A stretch of DNA of 64,000 nt, taken from sequence record MK327931.1, one strand, 5' to 3'. This document shows, piece by piece, positions 1,813 to 37,821 of this stretch (position 1 is its first letter; each line of letters begins with the position of its first letter). The notes beneath the pieces were generated by a model. That model searched no databases. It saw only the letters and a list, made by a program, of their open reading frames with translations, and was not told the DNA's origin. The position numbers and the translations under genes are program-made.

Positions 1813-2601
1813 TTAAATGTTAGTAGTATAGTACTTGATTTCGTTTTGAATTGCAAGTTCTATTTGTTTATTGAAAAGAATTCCAAACTCTTTAATTGAT
1901 TCACAATCGAATTCAATAGAAAAAGTATACTCTGGTACACGTACATTGTCAATACCCAAATACTCTTTTATGTAAATTTTAATGAGTTTACATAGTGCAG
2001 TACTAAGACATTGAATTTCAAAATGTTTTGCACCTTTGTCAAAATACTTGAATGCATCAATATCACCGACAATAAAACTATTCTTTAATGTAGTGAATAG
2101 GTTCTCAGGAAACACGGTAATAGGTGACATTGATTTAAGAATGTATGTATCTTTGGCATTCTTAATGTACTCAATGAAGCAGTAGTTAACGTCAGGCTCG
2201 ATTGAACGATCCGCGTTATGATACCAGTGTTTAAACTCACTGTACTCAGCAAACTTATGCTGGCGTAATGCGTTACAATCTTCACACAATGCAGTCATGT
2301 TCTCTTTATCATTACCGCCCTGAAGACAGTCCAGTATGTTATGGTCTAACGTCATGCGTACAAGACGTTTCCCTTTAAGTACATAAGGTCTGAATTTATA
2401 ACGTTCTTTAGTACTGTGCTTATGTAAAGTGAATACCACATTGGATTCACCACAACAATCACATTTAAAGCCATCACGTGACATTACATGAATGAGTTTG
2501 CGTGTGTTCGGTCCAAACTCAGATTTAGTAATGTTATCCACAATTTCTGATGGTTGGTAATATTTTGAATTCCGTTGAATCAGTTCATCGATAGTGCTCA
2601 T
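1813..2601 (-). CDS. HNH endonuclease-family protein
   Basis: CDCCG...TLDH...GG...N..ALCEDCN Zn-binding HNH signature. Confidence 0.8.
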   Translation of the reverse strand: MSTIDELIQRNSKYYQPSEIVDNITKSEFGPNTRKLIHVMSRDGFKCDCCGESNVVFTLHKHSTKERYKFRPYVLKGKRLVRMTLDHNILDCLQGGNDKENMTALCEDCNALRQHKFAEYSEFKHWYHNADRSIEPDVNYCFIEYIKNAKDTYILKSMSPITVFPENLFTTLKNSFIVGDIDAFKYFDKGAKHFEIQCLSTALCKLIKIYIKEYLGIDNVRVPEYTFSIEFDCESIKEFGILFNKQIELAIQNEIKYYTTNI

Positions 2602-2832
2602 TTACATTATTCCTTCTATGCAACAACCAAGAATTACTTTTTTAACTTCAACAACTCGTACCAAATAGAATCCATTTGAAAAGTTAAAACTATACATTTG
2701 TACTAAGGCATCTGCTTCAGATTTCGCACGGATACATGATAGATAAATTTCACGTATATCATCATCCAACGATACTTGTTTCTCTGCATTGATGACAATA
2801 GAACGAATCTCAAAACTAACACCATAACTCAT
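2602..2832 (-). CDS. hypothetical protein
   Basis: ORF in packed operon. Confidence 0.6.
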   Translation of the reverse strand: MSYGVSFEIRSIVINAEKQVSLDDDIREIYLSCIRAKSEADALVQMYSFNFSNGFYLVRVVEVKKVILGCCIEGIM

Positions 2833-3038
2833 TGAGTTTGTCCTACAATAAGCTTTGTGTTAGTATTACTATTGTAACACCACATTTGTTCTTTATTAAC
2901 TGTAATCCAAATATCTTTGTTTACTTGTTCGTATGTACTATCACGTACTGCTATGCATTGATTCATGGAATTCATTGGGGTTATTTGTATACCGGAATTA
3001 ACAGAGAAAGCGACTACTAAAAAGATTACTGAATTCAT
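2829..3038 (-). CDS. small secreted or membrane protein
   Basis: Hydrophobic N-terminus, two Cys, SD AGGA. Confidence 0.65.
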   Translation of the reverse strand: MNSVIFLVVAFSVNSGIQITPMNSMNQCIAVRDSTYEQVNKDIWITVNKEQMWCYNSNTNTKLIVGQTQ

Positions 3039-3102
3039 TGGATATTCCTTAATGGTTAATCATCCATCTCTTCGAGATGTCTGTTCGCTTCTAATACTAC
3101 GT

Positions 3103-3131
3103 ATTCTACGCGAATGATTAATAACTGTCAA
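3103..3131 (-). promoter_or_regulatory. sigma70-type promoter
   Basis: TTGACA-N17-TAGAAT. Confidence 0.85.
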
Positions 3132-3134
3132 GGA

Positions 3135-3620
3135 CTTTTAATATTGACGGGATTTGAGGAAGGGATTTTTCTTCCCCCCACAAGGAGGGAAATTTGACGC
3201 TGATGGTATCAGAGCTATTGCATTGAAGATTACTCATAACGAGTGCGAAAGCGGGTCATCCTGTTTCTCTCTACTTCAGTTTCATATGACGGTCTACACT
3301 TTTAAACATAGTGTATCTTCATTAAGTATCTATGCAATCAAATACTTAATGTGAGTACTCAAATTTTGGACGCAACTTTCCTGTACAAAATTCGATAACT
3401 CTCCCTTAGATAATTCGTAAGGTGTTATCCTTATATGTCTATCAAGGAACCACCAGCTATCCTAACGTGGTTCTTTATACAGCCGCATTGCCGTGAGGGG
3501 TTCAAACTATGCCCACATCTAACGGGTTTCTTTTGCTGTTCGCACTGTCGGACTGCTCAACTGCCCTCTACGTTTTCGAGTGGATCAGGTACATGAATAT
3601 CATGCCAACAGAATTGTACA
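3135..3620 (-). ncRNA. candidate large structured non-coding RNA (~490 nt)
   Basis: No credible ORF; hand count of ~46% GC over 3431-3600; multiple hairpins; extended -10 (TGaTATAAT) upstream at ~3627-3635. Confidence 0.6.
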
Positions 3621-3655
3621 AGATAATTATATCACAAACTTTTACTTCATCCCAT

Positions 3656-3686
3656 AAAAAAAGGTTGGCATAAGCCAACCTTTTTT
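3656..3686 (-). terminator. intrinsic terminator (bidirectional)
   Basis: AAGGTTGGC-ataa-GCCAACCTT flanked by A and T tracts. Confidence 0.85.
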
Positions 3687-3688
3687 CT

Positions 3689-4654
3689 TTAGAAATCTTC
3701 GTATTCGTACCCTTTTGCAAGTACTAGCTTCTTAAGCTTTTGCATAGCTTCACTGTACTTTCGATGTATTGATGAACGGGATTTAACATATTTTCCATTA
3801 TCATCAACAAAACCATTATCAGCAATCTCACGAAGCGTTTCAGGTTCATATTCACCTAGACCATGAACACGCTGGATAATCTCACGTTCTTTAGTACTCA
3901 ATTCGTTAGTCAGTTCATTGATAGCATAACGTAAAGGTGCACGAATACTATCAACATTGAGGTTAAAATCAGAAGCAGGTGAATGAATAATGTCACCTAG
4001 TGTACCATCGGTAACACCGTCTAATGGTGCATCCAGAGAAGTGTATTCGCTTTGAAATAACAAACAGTTATTAACATGCTGAATCTCAATCCCAGTACCC
4101 TCTGAGATTATTTCAGGAGTTGGGCGAACACCATGTTTACGCATATATTCCTGGCAGAATCTTTTTACTTTGATCTTATGAACACTCATATAACGTGGGA
4201 AGTGTACCATATAGTTAGCGTCAGAACTTTCGTTATAAACTGTCATGTAAATACTAGAAGAAGCATAGGTAATGAACTTCACATTCTTATTAAGATCAAA
4301 GGTTTTTAGTGCTCTCATGAACCCCTCAACACCATATGAAATCTTATCTTCAAATGGGATATAACAAGTACATTTACTTGCTACATCAATAATAAGTCCA
4401 TAATTGTAACGAACTAACAGTTCAGTGTTTTTCTTTACATTGATACCAGCTTGAATATCACGAATTAGATCTTCATTGGAAACATTTGGTGGTCGCTTAA
4501 GTGTAATATTATATTTGAAACTGCTTTGTACTTTACCTTCATTTTCATCTTTATCTTCAACGAAATCTAAGGCTTCTAGTGTGTTGACTTCTTCATTAGC
4601 AAAACATTCATCCAGAACTTCTTCGGCAATTGTATTTAAATCAAGCTTTTTCAC
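3689..4654 (-). CDS. RNA polymerase sigma70-family factor
   Basis: Region 2 (LLVRYNYGLI...EGFMRALKTFD...KFITYA), region 3 (SLDAPL), region 4 (LSTKEREII..HGL...TLREIA); GTG start with AGGAG SD. Confidence 0.9.
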   Translation of the reverse strand: MKKLDLNTIAEEVLDECFANEEVNTLEALDFVEDKDENEGKVQSSFKYNITLKRPPNVSNEDLIRDIQAGINVKKNTELLVRYNYGLIIDVASKCTCYIPFEDKISYGVEGFMRALKTFDLNKNVKFITYASSSIYMTVYNESSDANYMVHFPRYMSVHKIKVKRFCQEYMRKHGVRPTPEIISEGTGIEIQHVNNCLLFQSEYTSLDAPLDGVTDGTLGDIIHSPASDFNLNVDSIRAPLRYAINELTNELSTKEREIIQRVHGLGEYEPETLREIADNGFVDDNGKYVKSRSSIHRKYSEAMQKLKKLVLAKGYEYEDF

Positions 4655-8068: not shown

Positions 8069-8529
8069 CAGAAGCCTCTGTATTTTTCATACACTTCAAC
8101 GCATTCCATGATTTTGTCATCGTCCATCATATCATAGCCTTGTAGAAATTCTTCTTTATCAACCTTCCCTGCCATCATGTCTGTGTCAGAAATTCTGGAG
8201 TCATAGAAGGAATACATATCTTTATAGTACTGGTTTTTGTGCTGCTCAATCTTTACTTTAGCATATCCAGCACAAAATGAAGGAGATTTAACAACTTCCC
8301 ATTTATGCTTCTTGATGGGTTTATCATTAGCATGTTTTTCTCTGTATGTCTGACGATAACGTTCACGCATTTCAGGCATGTATTCTTCAGCAGTACGTTT
8401 AGGGGGAGTTTTACCAGTCCCAATAGTTTTAATAGTTTGACGTTGTTCTTCTGCGTGTACTGGGGAAATAAAACATGATGTACCAAACAGTACTGCTACG
8501 ATAACCATAAAATTCTTAAACATAATCAA
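8068..8529 (-). CDS. secreted or periplasmic hypothetical protein
   Basis: Signal peptide ending VHA-EE. Confidence 0.65.
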   Translation of the reverse strand: MIMFKNFMVIVAVLFGTSCFISPVHAEEQRQTIKTIGTGKTPPKRTAEEYMPEMRERYRQTYREKHANDKPIKKHKWEVVKSPSFCAGYAKVKIEQHKNQYYKDMYSFYDSRISDTDMMAGKVDKEEFLQGYDMMDDDKIMECVEVYEKYRGF

Positions 8530-13994: not shown

Positions 13995-14423
13995 TCACTT
14001 CCTATCCTTACTCATATTACTACGGATCACCCCACTAAGAAAACATATTTTCCTTAATGTATCATAACTGATATTTGTAAGATCATGTACAAAATTCAAC
14101 TGCAAGTACATTTCTTCAGTTAATTGATTAAATGTATCATCAACATGAATGTTAGTATGTTCCGTTATATCTATTTCTATATTATTTTCCCAAATATCAA
14201 TGTTAACAGCATAGTCTGATGTATGTCTGGATTGAACTGAAATAAAAATATTATTACTGTTGTATAATGTCTCGGTGTATCCATTCAAAAATGATCCAAC
14301 GACAACATCAAAAATGCCATCTCTAATTGGATTTTTTGTTTCAAACGTATCACTACAAACTTGACGGTATACAATGTCAACATACTTATCAATTAAAGTA
14401 AACAAATAACTCATTGCATTCAC
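13995..14423 (-). CDS. EExFFQxST-motif family protein
   Basis: EEMYLQLNFVHDL. Confidence 0.7.
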   Translation of the reverse strand: MNAMSYLFTLIDKYVDIVYRQVCSDTFETKNPIRDGIFDVVVGSFLNGYTETLYNSNNIFISVQSRHTSDYAVNIDIWENNIEIDITEHTNIHVDDTFNQLTEEMYLQLNFVHDLTNISYDTLRKICFLSGVIRSNMSKDRK

Positions 14424-14432
14424 CTATATAAG

Positions 14433-14461
14433 AAAAAAGGCCGATTCATCGAATCAGCCTT
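14433..14461 (-). terminator. intrinsic terminator overlapping the start site of promoter 14464-14493
   Basis: AAGGCUGAUUC-gau-GAAUCGGCCUU-UUUU. Confidence 0.8.
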
Positions 14462-14463
14462 AA

Positions 14464-14493
14464 GTATAACACAGTAGAAGTTAAAAAGTCAAC
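14464..14493 (-). promoter_or_regulatory. sigma70-type promoter
   Basis: TTGACT-N18-TATACT with extended TG. Confidence 0.65.
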
Positions 14494-14499
14494 TTCTAA

Positions 14500-14636
14500 A
14501 TTACAGCATCCAAGAGGAATAAAAAGATACTGTTAGAGGGTAACGAATATAATGAATTTGAGGGTAATATCATTATACGTAAAAAAGTGATAGCTTCTAT
14601 ACATAAGGAGGAATCAGTACTGACTAGAAGCTATCG
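14500..14636 (-). ncRNA. candidate sRNA of four stem-loops with CCUC(C) anti-SD-like loops
   Basis: Loops UUCCUCCUUAUG, UUACCCUC, CCCUC, UUCCUCUU; a G-U pair favours the minus strand. Confidence 0.55.
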
Positions 14637-14648
14637 GGTTAAACGATT

Positions 14649-14933
14649 TCAGTACTGAGTGTTTAGTTTAGGATGAGTATTTCCATCTTCGATTTGTTTT
14701 AGAATCGAGTCACGAATTTCTACTGCCCCTTGATAACTATATTTATCTTTTGGGATCACCCATGTATATTCGCCATCAGTGGTTTTAAAATCAATACATG
14801 GATTATCCCTGTATTCAGATGCAATGATTGCAATAACATGTAATGAATTCAATGAATGATTTGTATAAGGATAATTGTTATTATCTCTGAACGTGAATGT
14901 TTTAAGTTCATCAGGTGCAACAATGAATTCCAT
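14649..14933 (-). CDS. hypothetical protein
   Basis: ORF with GAGG SD. Confidence 0.7.
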   Translation of the reverse strand: MEFIVAPDELKTFTFRDNNNYPYTNHSLNSLHVIAIIASEYRDNPCIDFKTTDGEYTWVIPKDKYSYQGAVEIRDSILKQIEDGNTHPKLNTQY

Positions 14934-15124
14934 TATTCATCCTCGTACTTCTTGAATGGTGGAACATCTACCTTGAAGTCTTTGCACATCTTAGTTGTAC
15001 GAACTTCAGTATTGTTGTGATAATTTTTCTTAAATTCATAAGAAACATAATTACGAATACCAGGTGTATGAATAATAGCAAGAACCAATGTACGACCAAA
15101 CAAGCATAATAAATTCCAGAACAT
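14933..15124 (-). CDS. hypothetical protein
   Basis: ORF with AGGAG SD. Confidence 0.65.
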   Translation of the reverse strand: MFWNLLCLFGRTLVLAIIHTPGIRNYVSYEFKKNYHNNTEVRTTKMCKDFKVDVPPFKKYEDE

Positions 15125-15133
15125 ATGAATCTC

Positions 15134-15499
15134 CTAATTGTGGGTTTTAACCAAACGTGAGACAGCTAGTATAGCATTAACCTCATCCAATGTCAACCCA
15201 CCAATGTCATTAATCATTGAGTACTGAAATAGTGATTCTTCAGTGTAATGGTAATCATGAGAAGCAATAAAGATTGCTGGTTTAGAGGCATCCAAAATTA
15301 TCTTTGTCATTGTACTATATATATCAAATTGATATAATAGATTTTCACCTGTATATGCTACGTAGATATTATTTGAATAGGCTGGATGTACCATTGTAAA
15401 ACCATCATAACATAATATTTTTATGTTCGGATCGTCAAAATTGCCTGTATAAAGGTTATTACAAACATCTTGCATTATACGTACTATTAGACTAGTCAT
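15134..15499 (-). CDS. EExFFQxST-motif family protein
   Basis: TEESLFQYSMINDIGGLT. Confidence 0.75.
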   Translation of the reverse strand: MTSLIVRIMQDVCNNLYTGNFDDPNIKILCYDGFTMVHPAYSNNIYVAYTGENLLYQFDIYSTMTKIILDASKPAIFIASHDYHYTEESLFQYSMINDIGGLTLDEVNAILAVSRLVKTHN

Positions 15500-15917
15500 T
15501 TAATGGATTTAGTACCTCTTCTGGAATCAACTTTTGAACTTTAAGTATAGCTTTAATGTCCTCAAATGTTAATCCTAATATGTCGTTAAGGAGGCAGTAC
15601 TGGAAGAATTTTTCTTCAGTATCAATATCGTTAACATTCAATTCAATTGATTCATCATCATAATCATAATCTTCATTATCACATTCATAACTTCTGAATA
15701 TAACTTTTTCAAAATACACATCAAATGAATAAAAATGATTATTGAATTCATAACCAAGAAAAATATTAAAACATTTACTCAAATCTGTGGTTTGATTCAA
15801 ATCTGGATCATAGCAAAATACTCTAACTTCACCAATATCTTCTAATTGTACATCATGCAGTGACCATGCGTTGTTTTTTAATACATAGTTCACCATTTTA
15901 ACAATGTTGTATGTCAT
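15492..15917 (-). CDS. EExFFQxST-motif family protein
   Basis: TEEKFFQYCLLNDILGLT. Confidence 0.75.
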   Translation of the reverse strand: MTYNIVKMVNYVLKNNAWSLHDVQLEDIGEVRVFCYDPDLNQTTDLSKCFNIFLGYEFNNHFYSFDVYFEKVIFRSYECDNEDYDYDDESIELNVNDIDTEEKFFQYCLLNDILGLTFEDIKAILKVQKLIPEEVLNPLND

Positions 15918-15923
15918 AGTGTA

Positions 15924-16013
<90 letters not shown>

Positions 16014-16016
16014 AGA

Positions 16017-16210
<194 letters not shown>

Positions 16211-16211
16211 T

Positions 16212-16268
<57 letters not shown>

Positions 16269-16270
16269 TA

Positions 16271-16821
<551 letters not shown>

Positions 16822-16830
16822 TAATACCCG

Positions 16831-17232
16831 CTAGTAGTTTAAGTCTGCGGCGTTGAATACACCAAGTGAAGTCTTACCACGTAGTTTAGGTGAAAGGACA
16901 TACTTTGTCAATTTCTTTTTACCGTACCAGCGATTGAATTCGTCTTCAGTGACATATGGGTTCTGGAAATCGTATTCGCGTTTCTTATGCAGTTCTTTAG
17001 CACGTTCTGCAATCTTGGTTCGTTGGTCTTCTGGAATGTCGAATGTATTGTTACGTTCACACCATTCGTGCTCTAATGCACCCTGAAGAAACTGTTCGGT
17101 TTCTTTGACTAGAGTGATTTTAGTCAAGCCTTTTTCGATGTTCATATAATCATCGACGTATCCATTCCAAATAACAATCTCTGGATTGCCGTCAATTTCT
17201 TGAAGCATTTTGATCAAGTCATTCTTTTTCAT
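16831..17232 (-). CDS. hypothetical protein
   Basis: ORF with AGGA SD. Confidence 0.75.
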   Translation of the reverse strand: MKKNDLIKMLQEIDGNPEIVIWNGYVDDYMNIEKGLTKITLVKETEQFLQGALEHEWCERNNTFDIPEDQRTKIAERAKELHKKREYDFQNPYVTEDEFNRWYGKKKLTKYVLSPKLRGKTSLGVFNAADLNY

Positions 17233-17240
17233 TTAAATTC

Positions 17241-17498
<258 letters not shown>

Positions 17499-17519
17499 TT
17501 ATACCTCTCATTGTTTATG

Positions 17520-17591
<72 letters not shown>

Positions 17592-17595
17592 TAAT

Positions 17596-18203
<608 letters not shown>

Positions 18204-18254
18204 ATAAACCTCACTATACGTAACTTACACCATATACGTCTGATTGTGGAATTC

Positions 18255-18279
18255 ATTATATCAGTACTGAACTATTTAG

Positions 18280-18283
<4 letters not shown>
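18255..18283 (-). promoter_or_regulatory. repeated promoter cassette copy 2
   Basis: TTGACT-aaatagttcagtactga-TATAAT. Confidence 0.85.
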
Positions 18284-18693
<410 letters not shown>

Positions 18694-18702
18694 CTTTTTT
18701 TT

Positions 18703-18864
<162 letters not shown>

Positions 18865-18868
<4 letters not shown>

Positions 18869-19029
18869 AATCGTACCAGTAGTTCAATTAAGTACATTTC
18901 ATATGCTGGATCGTTGATAAGTTTATCATACAGATGTGGCTCTGAAATGAATTCCCAATGATACTTTAGCCATCTACCGATACCCGAATATCTAAAATTA
19001 ATGTCATTCATCCATTCTTCATGTGTCAT
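18865..19029 (-). CDS. MTHEEW-family small protein (54 aa)
   Basis: MTHEEWMNDINFRYSGIGRWLKYHWEFISE...; ATGA coupling. Confidence 0.75.
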
Positions 19030-19190
19030 AATCGTACCATTATTTCAATAAAGAACCACGGATACACTTCATGATTCATAAGTTTATCGTATTCTGCTGG
19101 GTCTGATATGATTTCCCAATGATACTTTAGCCAACTACCGATACCCGAATATCTAAAATTAATGTCATTCATCCATTCTTCATGCGTCAT
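19026..19190 (-). CDS. MTHEEW-family small protein (54 aa)
   Basis: MTHEEWMNDINFRYSGIGSWLKYHWEIISD...; near-identical 5' half to 18865-19029. Confidence 0.75.
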   Translation of the reverse strand: MTHEEWMNDINFRYSGIGSWLKYHWEIISDPAEYDKLMNHEVYPWFFIEIMVRL

Positions 19191-19213
19191 GGTTTTTAAC
19201 CTTTAATTAAAAT

Positions 19214-19290
19214 TGGCCGAGGTAGAGGGACTTGAACCCCCAACCTAGAGATTAGAATTCTCTTGCACTATCCAATTGTGCTATACCCCG
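19214..19290 (-). tRNA. trnR: tRNA-Arg(UCU)
   Basis: CGGGGTA/TACCTCG-G-CCA, loop AT-TCT-AA. Confidence 0.92.
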
Positions 19291-19294
19291 TATT

Positions 19295-19410
<116 letters not shown>

Positions 19411-19443
19411 ATGTTATGTCCCATTATATAATGAATTAATGAT

Positions 19444-19770
19444 TTATGCAAGTGCTTTAGATACACCGACACCAATAATTCCAGTGATATCGATATGGAT
19501 ATTGGCAAGTTGATTACTATCATATGGGTTTGTTTCTGTAATAACCAATGTTGTATCATTGACTAAAACCACAGTACCTTTTACACGATAACCATGTAGT
19601 AGTACTTGAACCTCATCTTCAGGTTTTAATGATTGAATAACTTCAAATAAAGTTGTTTCCATTTTTTGTATTCCTTGTTTAGTTTTGATTATTTGACTTT
19701 CTAAATGCCAGTTCGCATATAAACCAGGGTTTTCTGGTATCCAAAACATATGACCTGAAAAGATTTTCAT
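19444..19770 (-). CDS. hypothetical protein (likely starts later at METTLF)
   Basis: ORF; small beta-rich C-terminal part. Confidence 0.6.
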   Translation of the reverse strand: MKIFSGHMFWIPENPGLYANWHLESQIIKTKQGIQKMETTLFEVIQSLKPEDEVQVLLHGYRVKGTVVLVNDTTLVITETNPYDSNQLANIHIDITGIIGVGVSKALA

Positions 19771-19862
19771 CTCTTAATATATCATAATGTACCTGACGAA
19801 TGCCATTCCCAAAGCAGTCATGTTCTTTATGCTGTTTGGACATCCATTCTTCGTGTGTCATT

Positions 19863-19879
<17 letters not shown>
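19679..19879 (-). CDS. MTHEEW-family small protein
   Basis: MTHEEWMSKQHKEHDCFGNGIRQVHYDILRD. Confidence 0.7.
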
Positions 19880-20198
<319 letters not shown>

Positions 20199-20203
20199 TC
20201 TTA

Positions 20204-20398
20204 CTATTTTTTATCTCTAATAGCAAGCTCGTAGATGAACCAGTGGTTGGAATCTTCGTCCAAAACCAATGATTCGAACGTTTTTTTATCGTTCAAAACA
20301 TCATAATGGCCTTGGCGTATACCAAATCCAAAATGATCATGTTTATATTTTAGTGACTCTATCCATTCTTCATGTGTCATTTTATGTATCCAGTTCAA
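20204..20398 (-). CDS. MTHEEW-family small protein
   Basis: MTHEEWIESLKYKHDHFGFGIRQGHYDVLND. Confidence 0.7.
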   Translation of the reverse strand: MNWIHKMTHEEWIESLKYKHDHFGFGIRQGHYDVLNDKKTFESLVLDEDSNHWFIYELAIRDKK

Positions 20399-20455
20399 TT
20401 AAGTGTTTCATTTATTCTTCTGTAAAGAAAGCATTGCAATGGACAATGGAAAAGG
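20385..20455 (-). pseudogene. decayed duplicate of the 3' end of gene 19863-20078
   Basis: IVHCNAFFTEE*MKHLIELDT versus IVHDSAFFTKEEMQHLIVLDT. Confidence 0.6.
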
Positions 20456-20458
20456 TTA

Positions 20459-20638
20459 TTATATTTTTTTGTCTCTAACCGCAAGCTCATAGATGAACCA
20501 ACGATTTCCATTCTCATCTAGTACATATGATTCGAACTTATATTTGTCTCGTAAAATATCGAAATGACCATCAATAAATCCATTTCCAAACTGGTCATAA
20601 CGTTTTTTCATCATTGCCATCCATTCTTCATGTGTCAT
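20459..20638 (-). CDS. MTHEEW-family small protein (59 aa)
   Basis: Hand-translated MTHEEWMAMMKKRYDQFGNGFIDGHFDILRD...WFIYELAVRDKKI. Confidence 0.75.
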   Translation of the reverse strand: MTHEEWMAMMKKRYDQFGNGFIDGHFDILRDKYKFESYVLDENGNRWFIYELAVRDKKI

Positions 20639-20820
20639 CTCTTAATATCCATAACGGCTATACTAAAATATGTACCAAAATCATCACAATTGATAATGTT
20701 GTTATAGTACTCAATTGGGTTACGCAATGATATATACAATTCAAGCTTAAAATAGTATATATCTGCTGCATTTATATTATAGTGTAGATTAAACCACTCA
20801 TCAAATGTCTTAGGCTGCAT
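20635..20820 (-). CDS. small protein, possible distant MTHEEW relative
   Basis: KTFDEWF N-terminus; similar length. Confidence 0.55.
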   Translation of the reverse strand: MQPKTFDEWFNLHYNINAADIYYFKLELYISLRNPIEYYNNIINCDDFGTYFSIAVMDIKR

Positions 20821-21214
20821 TATATTTATCTTTATAAAAATCCATGATTTTAGTCAACAGTACTGCAATCGTATAATCTAAATCAGGATAAAGTAAATTG
20901 TACTGAAATTCTTCCTCAACACTATAGTTAGTGGTACAGTACTGGTAATCTTTATAACCTATTGAAAAATAATTCGGATACAATGTACAACGAAAGCGAT
21001 AAGCTTCATCTGTCATATAATCATTGTATTCAACACAGAAGTATAGTGATTTTGAATTTAATTCGATAAGCTCAACGAATCCATCAGGTAATGAATGGTT
21101 ATAAATTACTGAATCTTCATTAAACCATTCATAGTATTTTTCCAAAAAATCACTAATGGATACATCCAGACTTTGTATAGGTGGAGTTATGATAATTTGA
21201 ACTTCTTTATTCAT
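20810..21214 (-). CDS. EExFFQxST-motif family protein (divergent)
   Basis: SVEEEFQYNLLYPDL. Confidence 0.65.
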   Translation of the reverse strand: MNKEVQIIITPPIQSLDVSISDFLEKYYEWFNEDSVIYNHSLPDGFVELIELNSKSLYFCVEYNDYMTDEAYRFRCTLYPNYFSIGYKDYQYCTTNYSVEEEFQYNLLYPDLDYTIAVLLTKIMDFYKDKYNAA

Positions 21215-21714
21215 TTCGACCCCTTACTATATTTCACGTATGGGTTATCATACAGATCATAACTTTTTTGTGCACGTTCTTTTCGGCGTTCATACATGAT
21301 TCTATCATACTCTTTAGCTTTCTGATTTGCTTCATTATACAATTTTAAAATTAGCAAAAATGCATCAAGATCGGGATAGTTTGCCGGATTGATAGTACTC
21401 AGCATAAATCGTTCTTCTTCAGTTCTAGCTAAGTCAAATTCATACTTAATAGTTTTATACCCACTCCATTTATATATATGCGTTACTTTATTAGTAAGTA
21501 CATTATATTCAACGAAGTCAGTACTACCATCAAGTACACGAGTAATCTTAATAGATGTACCAATGACAATCTGCACAGAACTCATTTCTGAAGTTTTAAA
21601 GTAATAAATGTTATTACGGCGAAGATTAACTTCTCGATCTCCAATGCGAACATGCTTAATAACTTCCATTAATGGTTCTGGGACACCACGAATCGGCATG
21701 TTAGTATTCCTCAA
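21211..21714 (-). CDS. EExFFQxST-motif family protein
   Basis: TEEERFMLSTINP. Confidence 0.7.
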   Translation of the reverse strand: MRNTNMPIRGVPEPLMEVIKHVRIGDREVNLRRNNIYYFKTSEMSSVQIVIGTSIKITRVLDGSTDFVEYNVLTNKVTHIYKWSGYKTIKYEFDLARTEEERFMLSTINPANYPDLDAFLLILKLYNEANQKAKEYDRIMYERRKERAQKSYDLYDNPYVKYSKGSK

Positions 21715-22270
21715 TAACGGTTAGGAATCTATCCCAACCAGTATAAGTGAAATGATCAAAGTATTGTTTTTCGCCACCTACCATATATACTTCAATTAAA
21801 CCGTGGTCGAAATAATTTTTTGGTTTTTTAACTTCAGTTACGATTGCTTTATGTCTGAAACCATTATAATCAGTATATGTTACAATATCGTGAATTTTGA
21901 TATTATCAGGTGTATAAGTGTTGGCGTTATTATTGAGAACATGAAGATGATGGTCTACGATTTCTTTACTGGAAATTACTCCAAATATGTTACCAGAAAA
22001 TACTTTATTACCATTACAGGTCAATGCCCAGCCATCACCAACTTCAATAGATTCAAATACATAATGTGTGCAAATTTTAGATACATCTGACGTATCCCAG
22101 TAATCACCATCAAGATTGGTGAATTTATAAACAGTTTTGAGTTTTTCGCCATCAAATGAAAGCAATGATACTCCGATAACAACCGTTCCGTCTTTAAGAA
22201 TAATATTAAATTTATTATTTGTATTAAAATATGCTTCTGACTCATATGTGTTGAATTTAATAAAGTTCAT
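21701..22270 (-). CDS. hypothetical protein
   Basis: ORF with AGGAG SD. Confidence 0.75.
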   Translation of the reverse strand: MNFIKFNTYESEAYFNTNNKFNIILKDGTVVIGVSLLSFDGEKLKTVYKFTNLDGDYWDTSDVSKICTHYVFESIEVGDGWALTCNGNKVFSGNIFGVISSKEIVDHHLHVLNNNANTYTPDNIKIHDIVTYTDYNGFRHKAIVTEVKKPKNYFDHGLIEVYMVGGEKQYFDHFTYTGWDRFLTVIEEY

Positions 22271-36883: not shown

Positions 36884-36885
36884 AA

Positions 36886-37122
36886 TTATTCTTCTTCTCC
36901 TGAAGGAGTTCCACGTAGTTTGTCAAAATCAACCCAAATACCATGCTGATTTTTAAATCTACATTTCTCATAGTACCAGCTATAGTCAGTTTCAACACCT
37001 TGTGATATAGATCTAACACTACAATCATACATATTATATAAATGATCCCTGACAATATACGTATTAATCAGAATAACAAACAATACAATAATACCACAGA
37101 CTTTAGGATGATCCATAATCAA
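36886..37122 (-). CDS. membrane-anchored small protein
   Basis: N-terminal TM segment. Confidence 0.65.
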   Translation of the reverse strand: MIMDHPKVCGIIVLFVILINTYIVRDHLYNMYDCSVRSISQGVETDYSWYYEKCRFKNQHGIWVDFDKLRGTPSGEEE

Positions 37123-37124
37123 AT

Positions 37125-37238
37125 CTAGAACGGAACTCGTTTCAGTACTGTCAATTTACTACGACCGATGGCAACAGCTTTCAGTACTGCTAATGATACC
37201 AGTAATGAAATAACAAGAACACTCAAATAAATTAGCAT
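37125..37238 (-). CDS. small membrane peptide (37 aa)
   Basis: MLIYLSVLVISLLVSLAVLKAVAIGRSKLTVLKRVPF. Confidence 0.5.
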   Translation of the reverse strand: MLIYLSVLVISLLVSLAVLKAVAIGRSKLTVLKRVPF

Positions 37239-37240
37239 AA

Positions 37241-37821
37241 TTAGACTCCTACACCAAAACGTAAAAGGATGTTATTAACAAACACAAAATCAAATGGAGA
37301 CTTTGGTTCAGATACCGAGTACTGAAAAGTTTCAGCGGAGAAACTTTCCCTATTGTGCCATGTTGATGAATCGATTAGTAATTGTTTATCACCAATTGAC
37401 GTTGAATGTAATGGAAAGTGTGCTGATGAATTTATGGAATACGCATTTAGTTTTCCTTGTTCATCTAATGTGATACTAAGATAATATTTTTTCTCAATAT
37501 CAGGAATAAGTTCTTTTGTATACGAATAGATTGAATCAACCCATTCATCATGTACATTTTCTGCACCAATCAGGTGTCCGAATGATAAATTACGTTTAAC
37601 TGGCTTTGATCCTGGTCGAGTTAGAATGAATTGTTTTGTTAAGTAAAAATTATTATGTTTACTTCAATATTAACATTTTTAAAATTCACAACTTTATCAT
37701 ATACATTTCGAAAAACTGTTATATCCCAAGTACTAATTTCATCCATAATACTTATCACCAGTTCTTCTAGTTCTTGGATAAATGGCAAATCATCCTGATG
37801 AAATCTAGTCATGGTTTTCAT
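37241..37821 (-). pseudogene. hypothetical gene (~190 aa) interrupted by a frameshift near 37655
   Basis: ORF 37639-37821 is followed by a start-less ~135-codon open frame ending at 37241. Confidence 0.6.

What the first reader, a model, noticed from the sequence alone, without database searches (positions are those of the whole stretch)
3135..3620. ~490-nt GC-rich non-coding RNA candidate directly after the sigma-factor gene
This is the largest ORF-free gap in the window. It is bounded by a terminator plus extended -10 promoter upstream and a fresh consensus promoter (3103-3131) downstream, so it looks like its own transcription unit. GC is ~46% over 3431-3600 against ~31% background. It contains many helices, e.g. 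GAACCAC/GUGGUUC, AUUAAGUAU/AUACUUAAU, UACAC/GUGUA, GUCAU/AUGAC, CUGAU/AUCAG, UUCCCUCC/GGGGGGAA. I see no tmRNA, RNase P or group I core motifs. Its size is in the range of large phage RNAs such as ROOL and GOLLD, but no match is established.
Basis: partly seen in the sequence, partly recalled or inferred. Interest (0 to 1): 0.75.

Follow-up and report, generated by a model that had tools for sequence, protein, structure and literature searches.

The report
Multi-copy structured RNA of jumbo phages
The gap after the phage sigma-factor gene encodes one of four copies of a roughly 430-480-base, heavily knotted non-coding RNA that is conserved in all RaK2-like giant phages and a few bacterial islands but matches no described RNA family, so it is a real new RNA class whose job is still unknown.

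Summary
The window is Escherichia phage G17 (Asteriusvirus). The 650-bp gap 3039-3688 carries, on the minus strand, a promoter with an extended -10 (3634-3626) followed by a conserved unit (3619-3144).

This unit is one of four dispersed, same-orientation paralogs in the genome. RaK2-like jumbo phages of Escherichia, Salmonella, Klebsiella, Erwinia, Serratia, Yersinia, Cronobacter, Pectobacterium and Xanthomonas mostly carry 3-6 copies.

I aligned 44 non-redundant members and tested a 104-pair model with four pseudoknots:
- 89% of cells are paired, against 40% in slid controls.
- 71 pairs show compensatory changes.
- None of 500 shuffles reaches the observed values.

There is no conserved ORF. 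No Rfam 15 family matches, even at E<=10.

Adjacency to the sigma factor is specific to this copy. Full-length copies also sit in rare integrative islands of E. coli and Serratia.

The most likely reading is an independently transcribed, trans-acting structured RNA (a ribonucleoprotein or ribozyme core). Its function is unknown and expression is untested.

One feature is unexplained. Two 11-nt direct repeats flank a G-rich hairpin at the 3' end and evolve in concert. This keeps an origin/primer-RNA reading and a recombination-linked reading alive.

The parts
3657..3686 (-). Intrinsic terminator of the sigma-factor gene (AAAAAAGGTTGGC-TTAT-GCCAACCTTTTTT). Upstream boundary, not part of the RNA.
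   Evidence: Sequence. Annotated as a terminator in G17. The terminator-like Rfam junk hits fall here.
3626..3653 (-). Promoter of the RNA: -35-like GGGATG (3653-3648), extended -10 TG (3634-3633) and TATAAT (3631-3626). Predicted start near 3619.
   Evidence: Sequence. Nearly all 44 family members carry TGAAAC or GGGAC(A), then 13-14 nt, then TGnTATAAT at the same place. This matches the 'divergent RpoD-like' promoter class of phages CBB and GAP32 (PMC5259590). The transcription start is inferred.
3144..3619 (-). Whole conserved unit (476 nt), from the predicted start to the end of the second direct repeat.
   Evidence: Paralog and ortholog alignments. Homology between the E. coli island copy and the phage copies stops at DR2.
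3194..3619 (-). Core RNA (426 nt) up to the end of DR1. About half of the family members have an intrinsic terminator right after this point.
3542..3611 (-). 5' domain. Pseudoknot PK1 pairs 3611-3605 with 3551-3545. Also here: variable hairpin H0 (3604-3592), hairpin P1 with the conserved loop GAAAAYGUA (3588-3561), and the 3-bp stem P2 (3556-3554 with 3544-3542).
   Evidence: PK1 forms 8 bp, CUGNNUGR/YCANNCAG, in 40 of 44 members, with compensatory changes. P1 is 90% paired with changes on both sides at 7 of 8 pairs. P2 is 100% paired.
3479..3539 (-). Junction domain. Long-range helix Hd (3539-3535 with 3483-3479) encloses AAAAGAAA, helix CCGU/ACGG, and a hairpin with the conserved 11-nt loop CAUAGUUUGWA.
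   Evidence: Hd is 100% paired and 3 of its 5 pairs are compensatory. The CCGU/ACGG helix is 100% paired.
3435..3488 (-). Pseudoknot Hx (3488-3486 with 3437-3435), spanning hairpin He (3473-3447).
   Evidence: Hx is 100% paired, with AUG/CAU changing to ACA/UGU. All 7 pairs of He show changes on both sides.
3418..3433 (-). Hairpin UAAGG-N6-CCUUA, which lies between the invariant GAUAGACAUA and UAAGGGAG segments.
   Evidence: 84% paired; UAAGG/CCUUA changes to UAGG/CCUA and to UGAG/CUCA.
3362..3392 (-). Modular hairpin AAUUUUG-[UACAGGAAAGUUGCGUC]-CAAAAUU. The same module is inserted a second time, in the Hl hairpin, in some paralogs.
   Evidence: In the 352-kb genome it is found only inside the four RNA copies.
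3320..3351 (-). Hairpin Hf. Its loop (3338-3332) forms pseudoknot PK2 with 3223-3217.
   Evidence: All 10 pairs of Hf show changes on both sides. PK2 is 99.7% paired and 6 of its 7 pairs are compensatory.
3295..3315 (-). Hairpin Hh (UACAC...GUGUA).
   Evidence: 86% paired; 4 of 5 pairs are compensatory.
3217..3290 (-). H-type pseudoknot core. Hi pairs 3290-3286 with 3259-3255 and crosses both Hj (3278-3274 with 3228-3224) and Hk (3271-3267 with 3251-3247). Also here: hairpin Hl (3244-3232), then the 3' strand of PK2 (3223-3217). The core contains the invariant GACCG, AGAAAC and ACCCGC.
   Evidence: Hi, Hj and Hk are each 100% paired in 44 sequences, with 3-4 compensatory pairs each.
3194..3206 (-). 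Direct repeat DR1 (CCAUCAGCGUCAA; family consensus A-Y-C-A-N-Y-GUCA-R). It is the 3' arm of a small GAC...GUC hairpin.
   Evidence: helix 19.
3172..3191 (-). G-rich hairpin UUCCCUCC-UUGU-GGGGGGAA. The 3' arm GGGGGGAUG is invariant across the family.
   Evidence: The 5' arm varies only between C and U opposite G (70 U.G cells). These would be A.C mismatches on the other strand. The hairpin occurs only inside the RNA copies.
3144..3155 (-). Direct repeat DR2 (AAAUCCCGUCAA), the last conserved block of the unit.
   Evidence: DR1 and DR2 covary as direct repeats.
3103..3131 (-). Consensus sigma-70 promoter TTGACA-17-TAGAAT for the downstream genes. Downstream boundary, not part of the RNA family.

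Best explanation
Window 3619-3144 (minus strand) is a gene for a large, tertiary-structured non-coding RNA. It is one of four paralogs in this phage. It belongs to a previously undescribed family that mostly occurs in 3-6 copies in RaK2-like jumbo phage genomes.

Proposed mechanism:
1. RNA polymerase starts about 7 nt after an extended -10 promoter. This promoter is of the phage's 'TGAAAC/GGGAC -35' class, the class that precedes DNA-synthesis genes in relatives. (Promoter sequence shown; start site and timing inferred.)
2. The transcript folds into three domains held together by four pseudoknots, with about 90 invariant, mostly unpaired junction nucleotides. (Pairing shown by covariation.)
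3. The 3' end forms at or just after DR1, at a small GAC...GUC hairpin followed by a U-run, or at a full intrinsic terminator in about half of the copies. In copy A, which has no terminator, transcription reads on through the G-hairpin and DR2. (Inferred.)
4. The folded RNA then acts in trans, as the core of a ribonucleoprotein or as a ribozyme-like or oligomeric scaffold, during the middle of infection. It does not regulate a neighbouring gene. (Inferred from unrelated neighbours, from a copy followed by convergent genes, and from transfer of the unit alone into bacterial islands.)

The molecular target is unknown.
For: Family and copy number.
- blastn finds the element in 62-70 phage records, mostly 3-5 places per genome.
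- Four same-orientation paralogs lie at about 18, 128, 208 and 262 kb of a near-identical genome.
- nhmmer finds 97 copies in the fetched loci, of which 44 are non-redundant.

Structure.
- My 104-pair model is 89.2% paired, against about 40% for every slid control.
- 71 pairs and 651 cells show changes on both sides, against 70-119 cells in the slid controls.
- None of 500 shuffles reaches any of the five measures.
- Seven helices, including pseudoknots PK2, Hx and Hi, are 99.7-100% paired with compensatory changes. PK1 forms 8 bp in 40 of 44 members.

Strand. G.U pairs are abundant and are valid only on the minus strand.

Non-coding..

Transcription unit. The promoter type is conserved. Many copies carry a 5' insulating hairpin and a 3' terminator.

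Not a cis-regulator. Neighbours differ between paralogs, and copy C faces convergent genes. Only the RNA unit is shared between phages and the E. coli and Serratia islands.

Not a known family..
Against: - No expression data exist for this phage group, and none was found in the literature.
- Copy A has no recognisable terminator, so its 3' end is unknown.
- Conservation continues past the terminators, through the G-hairpin to DR2. DR1 and DR2 evolve in concert as direct repeats. A simple trans-acting RNA does not explain either point.
- Single-sequence folding is not exceptional (z = -1.74).
- Nothing identifies a partner or substrate.
Confidence: 0.6

Rival explanations
1. Replication origin with a structured primer RNA. 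The transcript, made from a middle-type promoter, ends at DR1. Its 3' end is identical in sequence to DR2, which lies 55-100 nt downstream. It anneals to the template strand there and primes leading-strand synthesis. The 4-6 dispersed copies would be the multiple origins of a T4-like replication mode, and bacterial islands carry one so that the phage machinery replicates them.
For: - The copies are dispersed and in the same orientation.
- The promoter class is the one linked to DNA-synthesis genes. From my own knowledge, T4 oriF and oriG use middle promoters and ColE1 RNA II is a structured primer.
- Concerted evolution of DR1 and DR2 is what a 'primer 3' end equals annealing site' model predicts.
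- Conservation ends exactly at DR2.
- Terminators lie between DR1 and DR2.
- Integrative islands have captured the unit.
Against: - Three of the four copies lie in uniformly skewed DNA with no GC-skew switch. This is weak evidence, because skew follows gene strand.
- T4-type origins do not need a pseudoknotted RNA of about 400 nt.
- In the E-clade copies the terminator stem includes the GUCAG of DR1, so the RNA would end about 25 nt past DR1.
- DR1 and DR2 differ by a conserved 1-nt offset.
- The island shows no satellite-type genes.
Confidence: 0.15
2. Decoy or sponge RNA in the phage-host arms race. The abundant structured RNA sequesters a host factor (an RNA chaperone, a nuclease or a defence sensor). 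The rare host-island copies would be counter-measures or baits.
For: - Multiple diverged paralogs are retained.
- The E. coli copy keeps the phage-type promoter. It sits in an integrative island that also carries a candidate defence system, PDC-M45 (DuOB + DUF488, next to an mSLOG/DUF4326 protein).
- The RNA has A-rich single strands and U-rich 3' ends.
Against: - No partner has been identified.
- The island association rests on one or two independent cases, and defence islands collect unrelated cargo.
- The very high conservation of junction nucleotides looks more like a catalytic or specific binding core than a sponge.
Confidence: 0.1
3. Element linked to site-specific recombination or mobility. 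DR1, the G-rich palindrome and DR2 form a DNA recombination site or cassette. The RNA would be a guide or accessory for a recombinase, by analogy with bridge/seek RNAs and omega RNAs.
For: - In Serratia sp. 2723, a 568-aa large serine recombinase lies directly upstream on the same strand.
- In Serratia sp. L9, a truncated resolvase abuts a 5'-truncated copy.
- The E. coli island has a serine recombinase and a broken tyrosine integrase.
- Direct repeats that evolve in concert around a near-perfect 11+3+11 palindrome resemble attL/attR cores.
Against: - None of the four phage copies has a recombinase neighbour.
- Integrative islands always carry integrases, and the two Serratia loci are homologous to each other, so they are not independent cases.
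- The palindrome varies only by C/U on one arm, which fits an RNA hairpin.
- The G-hairpin never occurs alone.
- No complementary guide for the repeats was found.
Confidence: 0.06
4. Cis-acting leader or attenuator. The structured RNA senses a signal and controls read-through of the DR1 hairpin or terminator into the downstream genes.
For: - The strand GAC(GA) just 5' of DR1 can pair with either DR1 or DR2 in single-sequence folds.
- Three pyrimidine-rich segments could compete for one invariant G-run.
- Copy A has no terminator and is followed by genes in the same orientation.
Against: - Downstream genes are unrelated between paralogs, and copy C is followed by convergent genes.
- Copy A and its relatives in the same tree group (BF, GAP32, XbC2) are followed by a separate strong sigma-70 promoter for the downstream genes.
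- The unit moves between genomes without any neighbouring gene.
Confidence: 0.06
5. Not a functional RNA: a decayed gene, a repeat or a chance set of helices.
For: - Single-sequence folding has z = -1.74.
- Some GenBank records annotate small hypothetical ORFs across the region.
Against: - The covariation statistics.
- 93 columns are invariant across 44 members, at 58% mean column identity.
- No frame is open in all members.
Confidence: 0.01

Closest known systems
ROOL and GOLLD RNAs (large ornate phage/prophage-associated bacterial RNAs)
   Same: - Several hundred nucleotides long, with multistem junctions and several pseudoknots.
- Found in phages and also in non-prophage bacterial DNA.
- No associated protein gene, and function unknown (PMC5737381).
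- Shown by cryo-EM to form RNA-only homo-oligomers (10.1101/2024.12.08.627333, listed).
   Different: - No match to either covariance model even at E<=10, in this copy or in ten diverse members.
- The hosts are Gram-negative jumbo phages.
- Present mostly as 3-6 diverged paralogs per genome.
- Not adjacent to tRNAs here: the nearest tRNA is about 12 kb away.
- Far more invariant nucleotides: 93 against about 10 for ROOL.
- Carries the direct-repeat and G-hairpin tail.
ncRNA001-004 of Pseudomonas jumbo phage PA5oct, a distant relative of RaK2-like phages
   Same: - RNA-seq-defined, ORF-free transcripts of 236-619 nt in a related jumbo phage.
- Two are highly expressed throughout infection, and one is 451 nt (PMC7318152).
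   Different: The 451-nt ncRNA002 locus shares none of the family's motifs. The family HMM does not hit it at E<=10. The other three were not fetched.
Primer transcripts of replication origins (ColE1 RNA II; T4 oriF/oriG middle-promoter transcripts) - comparison from my own knowledge
   Same: - A dedicated promoter drives a non-coding transcript.
- Several dispersed copies per T4-like genome.
- A G-rich element lies near the presumed RNA 3' end.
- RNA II is about 550 nt, and its fold matters for function.
   Different: - No sequence relation.
- T4 origin transcripts have no conserved tertiary fold.
- No AT-rich unwinding element was identified here.
- Origin activity has not been tested.
Transposon and recombinase guide RNAs (IS110 bridge RNA, IscB/TnpB omega RNA, HEARO)
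   Same: - Structured, pseudoknotted non-coding RNAs that travel with mobile DNA.
- Repeat sequences show matched variation.
- Some bacterial copies lie next to a recombinase gene.
   Different: - No IS110, IscB or TnpB-type ORF lies next to any phage copy.
- No HEARO hit in Rfam.
- The recombinases seen are serine recombinases, which are not known to use guide RNAs.
- No guide segment complementary to the repeats was found.
Bacterial RNase P RNA
   Same: - Similar size class, with long-range pseudoknots.
- The motif AACAG..ACCCGCUUUCG loosely recalls the P4 3' strand (from memory; a lead only).
- The phage carries many tRNAs.
   Different: - No RNase P model hit at E<=10 in 11 members.
- The helix order (Hi-Hj-Hk-Hi'-Hk'-Hl-Hj') does not match P1-P4.
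- Multiple diverged copies per genome.

Membership tests
ROOL (Rfam) | [quoted passage not shown] | tested here: not met
   No hit at E<=10, in window 2900-3800 or in ten diverse members.
ROOL / GOLLD | Frequent location next to tRNA genes or in prophages | tested here: not met
   The copy in the window is about 12 kb from the nearest tRNA. The hosts are lytic jumbo phages. Flanks of the other three paralogs were not scanned for tRNAs.
GOLLD (Rfam) | Match to the family covariance model (an RNA of about 800 nt) | tested here: not met
   No hit at E<=10. The unit is 430-560 nt.
RNase P RNA (bacterial type A/B) | Covariance-model match, P4 pseudoknot with its conserved strands | tested here: not met
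   No hit at E<=10. The helix topology derived differs.
tmRNA | tRNA-like domain plus tag-peptide reading frame | tested here: not met
   Rfam gives no hit on the region. ARAGORN was run only on 14000-22000 and lists none there.
Group I / group II introns | Covariance-model match (P3-P9 core, or domain V); interruption of a host gene | tested here: not met
   No hit at E<=10. All copies are intergenic, with their own promoter.
HEARO / omega RNA (IscB, TnpB) | Adjacent IscB/IsrB/TnpB gene; model match | tested here: not met
   Pfam on the flanking ORFs of all four paralogs shows no RuvC/HNH effector of that kind. There is no Rfam hit. The HNH ORF at 1813-2601 is about 0.5 kb away, only at copy A.
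IS110 bridge RNA | Encoded in the non-coding end of an IS110/IS1111 element, next to a DEDD/Tnp recombinase; two guide loops complementary to target and donor | tested here: not met
   No such recombinase lies next to any copy. No segment complementary to DR1 or DR2 was found.
6S RNA | A rod of about 180 nt with a central bubble that mimics an open promoter | tested here: not met
   No Rfam hit. The structure is multi-domain and pseudoknotted.
Origin primer RNA (ColE1 RNA II-like / T4 ori transcript) | The transcript forms a persistent hybrid and primes DNA synthesis at a defined site | not testable with these tools
   Only circumstantial evidence: dispersed copies, promoter class and DR1=DR2. 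GC skew is uninformative.
Riboswitch / cis-regulatory leader | Conserved association with a downstream gene class, in the same orientation | tested here: not met
   Downstream genes are unrelated, and copy C faces convergent genes.
New family proposed here (RaK2-like jumbo-phage multi-copy RNA) | PK1, Hd, Hx, PK2 and the Hi/Hj/Hk pseudoknot core; the invariant blocks GAAAAYGUA, CACGGCAAUGCGGC, GAUAGACAUA, UAAGGGAG, GACCG and ACCCGC; the DR1, G-hairpin, DR2 tail | tested here: met
   The window copy is row 1 of alignment A1 and carries every element.

The most novel reading that the evidence does not exclude
The unit is a new kind of RNA-based genetic element, not just a new ornate RNA. In this reading, a large pseudoknotted RNA has an 11-nt 3'-terminal sequence (DR1) that is deliberately duplicated 55-100 nt downstream (DR2), beyond a G-rich hairpin. 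The RNA's own 3' end is then matched to a DNA or RNA site. One version is an RNA-primed replication origin used 4-6 times per jumbo-phage genome and hijacked by bacterial islands. Another is a self-processing ribozyme, or a recombinase-linked RNA, that recognises both repeats.
Probability: 0.15. Interest if true: 0.9.

Novelty: new variant of a known kind. Interest (0 to 1): 0.8.

Why it matters
Large, intricately folded bacterial and phage RNAs are rare. The known examples are rRNA, RNase P, group I and II introns, tmRNA, OLE, GOLLD, ROOL, raiA and HEARO. Each has revealed unusual biochemistry.

This family has features that are hard to explain without a sophisticated function:
- a length of about 430-560 nt;
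- four pseudoknots supported by covariation;
- about 90 invariant nucleotides;
- mostly 3-6 anciently diverged copies per RaK2-like jumbo phage genome;
- occasional transfer, as a bare unit, into bacterial integrative islands.

It sits in phages that grow on laboratory E. coli K-12 (phage Sharanji is 100% identical here). Expression, structure (SHAPE, cryo-EM) and genetics are therefore directly accessible.

The concerted evolution of two direct repeats at its 3' end is not a behaviour described for known RNA classes. It may point to a new way of coupling an RNA to a DNA site.

More practically, current annotations either leave these loci blank or fill them with spurious small ORFs.

Tried and rejected
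- **Rfam.** The gathering scan of the whole window found only 6 tRNAs. The E<=10 scan of 2900-3800 gave only terminator-like junk. The E<=10 scan of ten diverse members gave no recurrent hit. Membership of any Rfam family is rejected.
- **Second copy in the window.** None. The paralogs lie outside it.
- **Link to the sigma factor.** The ORF upstream of paralog C also has about 320 aa and a GTG start, but it is unrelated. The neighbours of all paralogs are unrelated.
- **Homology with PA5oct ncRNA002.** No shared motifs and no HMM hit.
- **Automatic RNAalifold on raw MAFFT alignments.** It gave a poor structure because of variable hairpins and pseudoknots. mafft-qinsi and mafft-xinsi were not installed. 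I replaced these with anchor-segment tables, a column-pair scan and a hand-built model.
- **A third sequence complementary to DR1/DR2.** Mutual information and an antisense scan found none, apart from the invariant G-run.
- **DR1 loop pairing with the invariant GAUAG.** Rejected by eye, because the covarying Y would break it.
- **G-hairpin as a free-standing mobile palindrome.** Rejected, because it occurs only inside the four RNA copies.
- **GC-skew test of the origin idea.** Uninformative.
- **Micro-ORF MKLPQQISSV after the G-run.** Rejected. Copy A has no AUG there, and indels break the frame.
- **Satellite nature of the E. coli island.** PHROGs gave no capsid or replication hits.
- **Shared protein partner.** tblastn found no protein shared between the E. 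coli and Serratia islands.
- **Plasmids.** No copy found.
- **Methylophilus hits.** These are chance pattern matches.
- **Literature.** Searches for a prior description, or for transcriptomes of RaK2-like coliphages, found nothing.
- **Other ORF-poor gap (36884-37804).** Ordinary.
Full report
**Where we are.** The window is identical to Escherichia phage vB_EcoM_G17 (MK327931.1, Asteriusvirus, a RaK2-like jumbo phage). Window position equals record position minus 62000. Genes around the finding run on the minus strand. The sigma-factor gene is 4654..3689 (Pfam Sigma70 r2/r3/r4). Its terminator hairpin is at 3657-3686. Then comes a 650-bp CDS-free gap (3039-3688), followed by a 69-aa ORF (3038..2829).

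**Checking the observation.**
- GC is 46.5% over 3431-3600, against 33.1% for the whole window.
- The extended -10, TGaTATAAT, lies at 3634-3626. The consensus promoter TTGACA-17-TAGAAT lies at 3131-3103.
- The gap is not strictly the largest ORF-poor stretch in the window. The comparable gap I tested (36884-37804) is single-copy and genus-restricted.
- Single-sequence folding is unremarkable (z = -1.74). The case therefore rests on comparative data.

**A multi-copy family.**
- blastn against 50,697 phage records finds the element in 62 records at 257 places, mostly 3-5 places per genome. A second query raises this to 70 records, including Klebsiella phages. Identity is about 70% across genera: Escherichia, Salmonella, Erwinia, Serratia, Yersinia, Pectobacterium, Cronobacter, Xanthomonas and Klebsiella.
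- The window holds only one copy.
- In a 99%-identical unannotated genome (OR844650.1), the four copies lie at about 18, 128, 208 and 262 kb, all in the same orientation.
- Pattern scans of IMG/VR and JGI metagenomes, followed by nhmmer, gave 97 copies. After clustering at 93% identity, 44 full-length non-redundant members remain.
- A tree shows at least six paralog groups, each spanning several phage genera. The duplications are therefore old.

**It is a structured RNA on the minus strand.**
- Paralog alignments show invariant blocks separated by helices whose sequences differ but stay complementary.
- A column-pair scan recovered nested and crossing helices. From these I built a 104-pair model on the tool alignment A1.
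- The count of structure pairs gives 89.2% of cells paired, against 40.0-40.7% when partners are slid by 1-3 columns. 71 of 104 pairs and 651 cells show changes on both sides, against 70-119 cells in the slid controls. None of 500 shuffles reaches any measure.
- Helices P2, Hd, Hx, Hi, Hj and Hk are 100% paired, and PK2 is 99.7% paired. All carry multiple compensatory pair types. After correcting the register, PK1 forms 8 bp in 40 of 44 members.
- In RNA numbering, n = 3620 minus the window coordinate. The architecture is:
  - a 5' domain (PK1, H0, P1 and P2);
  - a junction domain (Hd, Hb and Hc), tied to the next segment by pseudoknot Hx;
  - hairpins He, Hg2 and Hm;
  - a 3' domain in which the loop of Hf pairs with a distal strand (PK2), around hairpin Hh and an H-type pseudoknot (Hi crossing Hj and Hk, plus hairpin Hl).
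- 93 columns are invariant, and about 69 more are at least 90% conserved. Most of these lie in junctions.
- G.U pairs are frequent and would be A.C mismatches on the plus strand. This fixes the strand.

**Not coding, not a known family.**
- Every reading frame on both strands has at least 3 stops in every member. The longest ORFs differ in place and strand. 635 of 745 indel runs are not multiples of three.
- Rfam 15 gives nothing at the gathering threshold. Scans at E<=10 give nothing recurrent, for this copy or for ten diverse members. That excludes RNase P, tmRNA, group I and II introns, 6S, HEARO, OLE, ROOL and GOLLD as families.
- PA5oct, a distant relative, has four ncRNAs defined by RNA-seq (PMC7318152). 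Its 451-nt ncRNA002 shares no motif and gets no HMM hit.
- I found no paper that describes this family.

**Transcription signals.**
- Almost every copy is preceded by TGAAAC (or GGGAC/GGGATG), then 13-14 nt, then TGnTATAAT. This is the 'divergent RpoD-like' promoter (-35 TGAAACG) reported for CBB and GAP32, mostly upstream of DNA-synthesis genes (PMC5259590). A middle-phase timing is my inference.
- In several paralog groups, a strong hairpin plus U-run begins a few bases after the -10. Read-through from upstream would therefore terminate there. Transcripts started at the promoter would lack the first bases of the stem. I read this as insulation of an independent transcription unit.
- At the 3' side, about half of the copies have a clear intrinsic terminator right after DR1. 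Many others have a small GAC...GUC hairpin followed by a U-run. Copy A has neither a strong terminator nor a U-run.

**Context argues against cis-regulation and against a sigma link.**
- The genes flanking the four paralogs are unrelated: sigma factor and a 69-aa ORF; two proteins with no Pfam family; a homing-endonuclease-like protein and convergent baseplate genes; DUF7325 and a 142-aa ORF.
- The related copies fetched from BF, GAP32 and XbC2 are flanked by short hypothetical genes, none annotated as a sigma factor.

**The 3' tail: an unexplained feature.**
- After the core comes DR1 (A-Y-C-A-N-Y-GUCA-R; 3206-3194). Next is an optional terminator. Then comes a G-rich hairpin (3191-3172), whose 3' arm GGGGGGAUG is invariant and whose 5' arm varies only between C and U. 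A conserved spacer follows, and then DR2 (3155-3144). Conservation stops after DR2.
- DR1 and DR2 covary as direct repeats. The Y position is U/U in 33 members and C/C in 11, with no exception. The C/C state appears in at least three separate clades.
- Single branches also show concerted changes at the N position: L025 is G/G, L077 is C/C, L084 is A/A, and L029 and L030 are GU/GU.
- No third column covaries in a complementary way. The only recurrent antisense partner of both repeats is the invariant G-run.
- In single-sequence folds, the strand just 5' of DR1 can pair with either repeat.
- The G-hairpin and the modular hairpin occur nowhere else in the genome.
- After DR2, most copies read GTATAAAKT, which resembles the T4-like late motif noted for CBB.

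**Outside phages.**
- Two of 5,426 complete E. coli genomes carry an identical full-length copy (402 bits against the family HMM). It keeps a GGGATG...TGaTATAAT promoter.
- The copy lies in an island of about 10 kb between ybaA and ffs. The island contains a serine recombinase, a tyrosine integrase broken by IS3, and the candidate defence genes PDC-M45 (DuOB and DUF488, next to an mSLOG/DUF4326 protein).
- Its closest phage relatives are copies in Serratia phage BF and Erwinia phages, at 80.6% identity.
- Serratia sp. 2723 has a full-length copy directly downstream of a 568-aa large serine recombinase. Serratia sp. L9 has a 5'-truncated copy that abuts a truncated resolvase.
- Only the RNA unit is shared between the E. 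coli locus and the Serratia loci. No plasmid carries it.

**Interpretation.**
- Shown: a conserved, pseudoknotted, non-coding RNA fold on the minus strand; its multi-copy and cross-genus distribution; a conserved promoter type; no membership of any known family.
- Inferred: the transcription start site, middle-phase timing, the 3' end at DR1, and action in trans.
- I favour an independently transcribed trans-acting RNA, as the core of a ribonucleoprotein, a ribozyme-like molecule or an oligomeric scaffold. I put this at about 0.6. Three observations support it: the invariant junctions, the lack of any conserved neighbour, and the transfer of the bare unit between genomes.
- The direct-repeat tail keeps three other readings open: an origin/primer-RNA reading (about 0.15), a decoy reading (about 0.1) and a recombination-linked reading (about 0.06). 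A cis-leader role is unlikely (about 0.06).

**Comparison with known classes.** The closest analogues in kind are ROOL and GOLLD. This family differs from them in sequence, structure, host range, copy number, degree of conservation and the repeat tail. It is a new RNA class within the known category of large ornate phage-associated RNAs.

Noticed in passing
L123 8663-9250 (E. coli LR-29-1 chromosome NZ_AP027515.1, 3478969-3479556); also NZ_CM130020.1: A full-length member of the phage RNA family, with a phage-type promoter. It sits in a ~10-kb integrative island between ybaA and ffs that also carries the candidate defence genes PDC-M45 (DuOB and DUF488, next to an mSLOG/DUF4326 protein). Only 2 of 5,426 E. 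coli genomes carry it.
   Followed up: partly
L122 3257-5900 (Serratia sp. 2723) and L121 3513-4445 (Serratia sp. L9 chromosome): In Serratia sp. 2723, the RNA lies directly downstream of a 568-aa large serine recombinase, on the same strand. In Serratia sp. L9, a 200-aa truncated resolvase abuts a copy that lacks its first ~130 positions.
   Followed up: partly
window 3206-3194 and 3155-3144, and the same blocks in all 44 family members: The two 11-13-nt direct repeats at the 3' end evolve in concert. Matched substitutions in both repeats appear in several separate lineages, and no complementary partner was found.
   Followed up: partly
family members L027, L016, L019, L023, L028, L017, L073, L097, L034, L043 and others (5' flanks): A terminator-like hairpin plus U-run starts only ~5 nt after the -10 box. 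The predicted transcription start therefore falls inside the 5' arm of the stem. This may be an arrangement that stops read-through from upstream while sparing transcripts started at the local promoter.
   Followed up: no
window 3362-3392; also L007 ~8190-8220 (paralog D) and several other members: A modular hairpin (AAUUUUG-UACAAUAUAGAUCCGUC-CAAAAUU) recurs at two different insertion points of the RNA in different paralogs. This is the behaviour of a peripheral tertiary-contact or protein-binding module.
   Followed up: partly
window 20104-20176 (minus strand): ARAGORN calls a seventh tRNA (Gly, anticodon TCC). The Rfam gathering-threshold scan did not list it.
   Followed up: no
window 1813-2601 (minus strand): A 262-aa ORF, annotated in G17 as similar to an HNH endonuclease, lies ~0.5 kb downstream of the RNA. 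Paralog C has a homing-endonuclease-like gene upstream (DUF723, treble-clef zinc finger, DUF2726). Selfish endonucleases cluster near at least two of the copies.
   Followed up: no
L011, L012 and L013, downstream of DR2: In BF, GAP32 and XbC2, the copy in the same tree group as copy A is followed by a conserved palindrome (GATTTTCTT...AAGAAAATC) that abuts a strong sigma-70 promoter (TTGACT-17-TAnnAT). In the window, the equivalent promoter is at 3131-3103.
   Followed up: no
L007 21320-21637 (ECO103 4-12-1 genome, ~221.3 kb): The jumbo phage encodes a DUF4326-type domain that is 41% identical to the C-terminal part of the mSLOG/DUF4326 protein of the E. coli island.
   Followed up: no
window 36884-37804: Another ORF-poor stretch of ~0.9 kb. 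It is single-copy, restricted to Asteriusvirus and close Salmonella phages, and annotated with small hypothetical ORFs. Nothing unusual was seen.
   Followed up: partly
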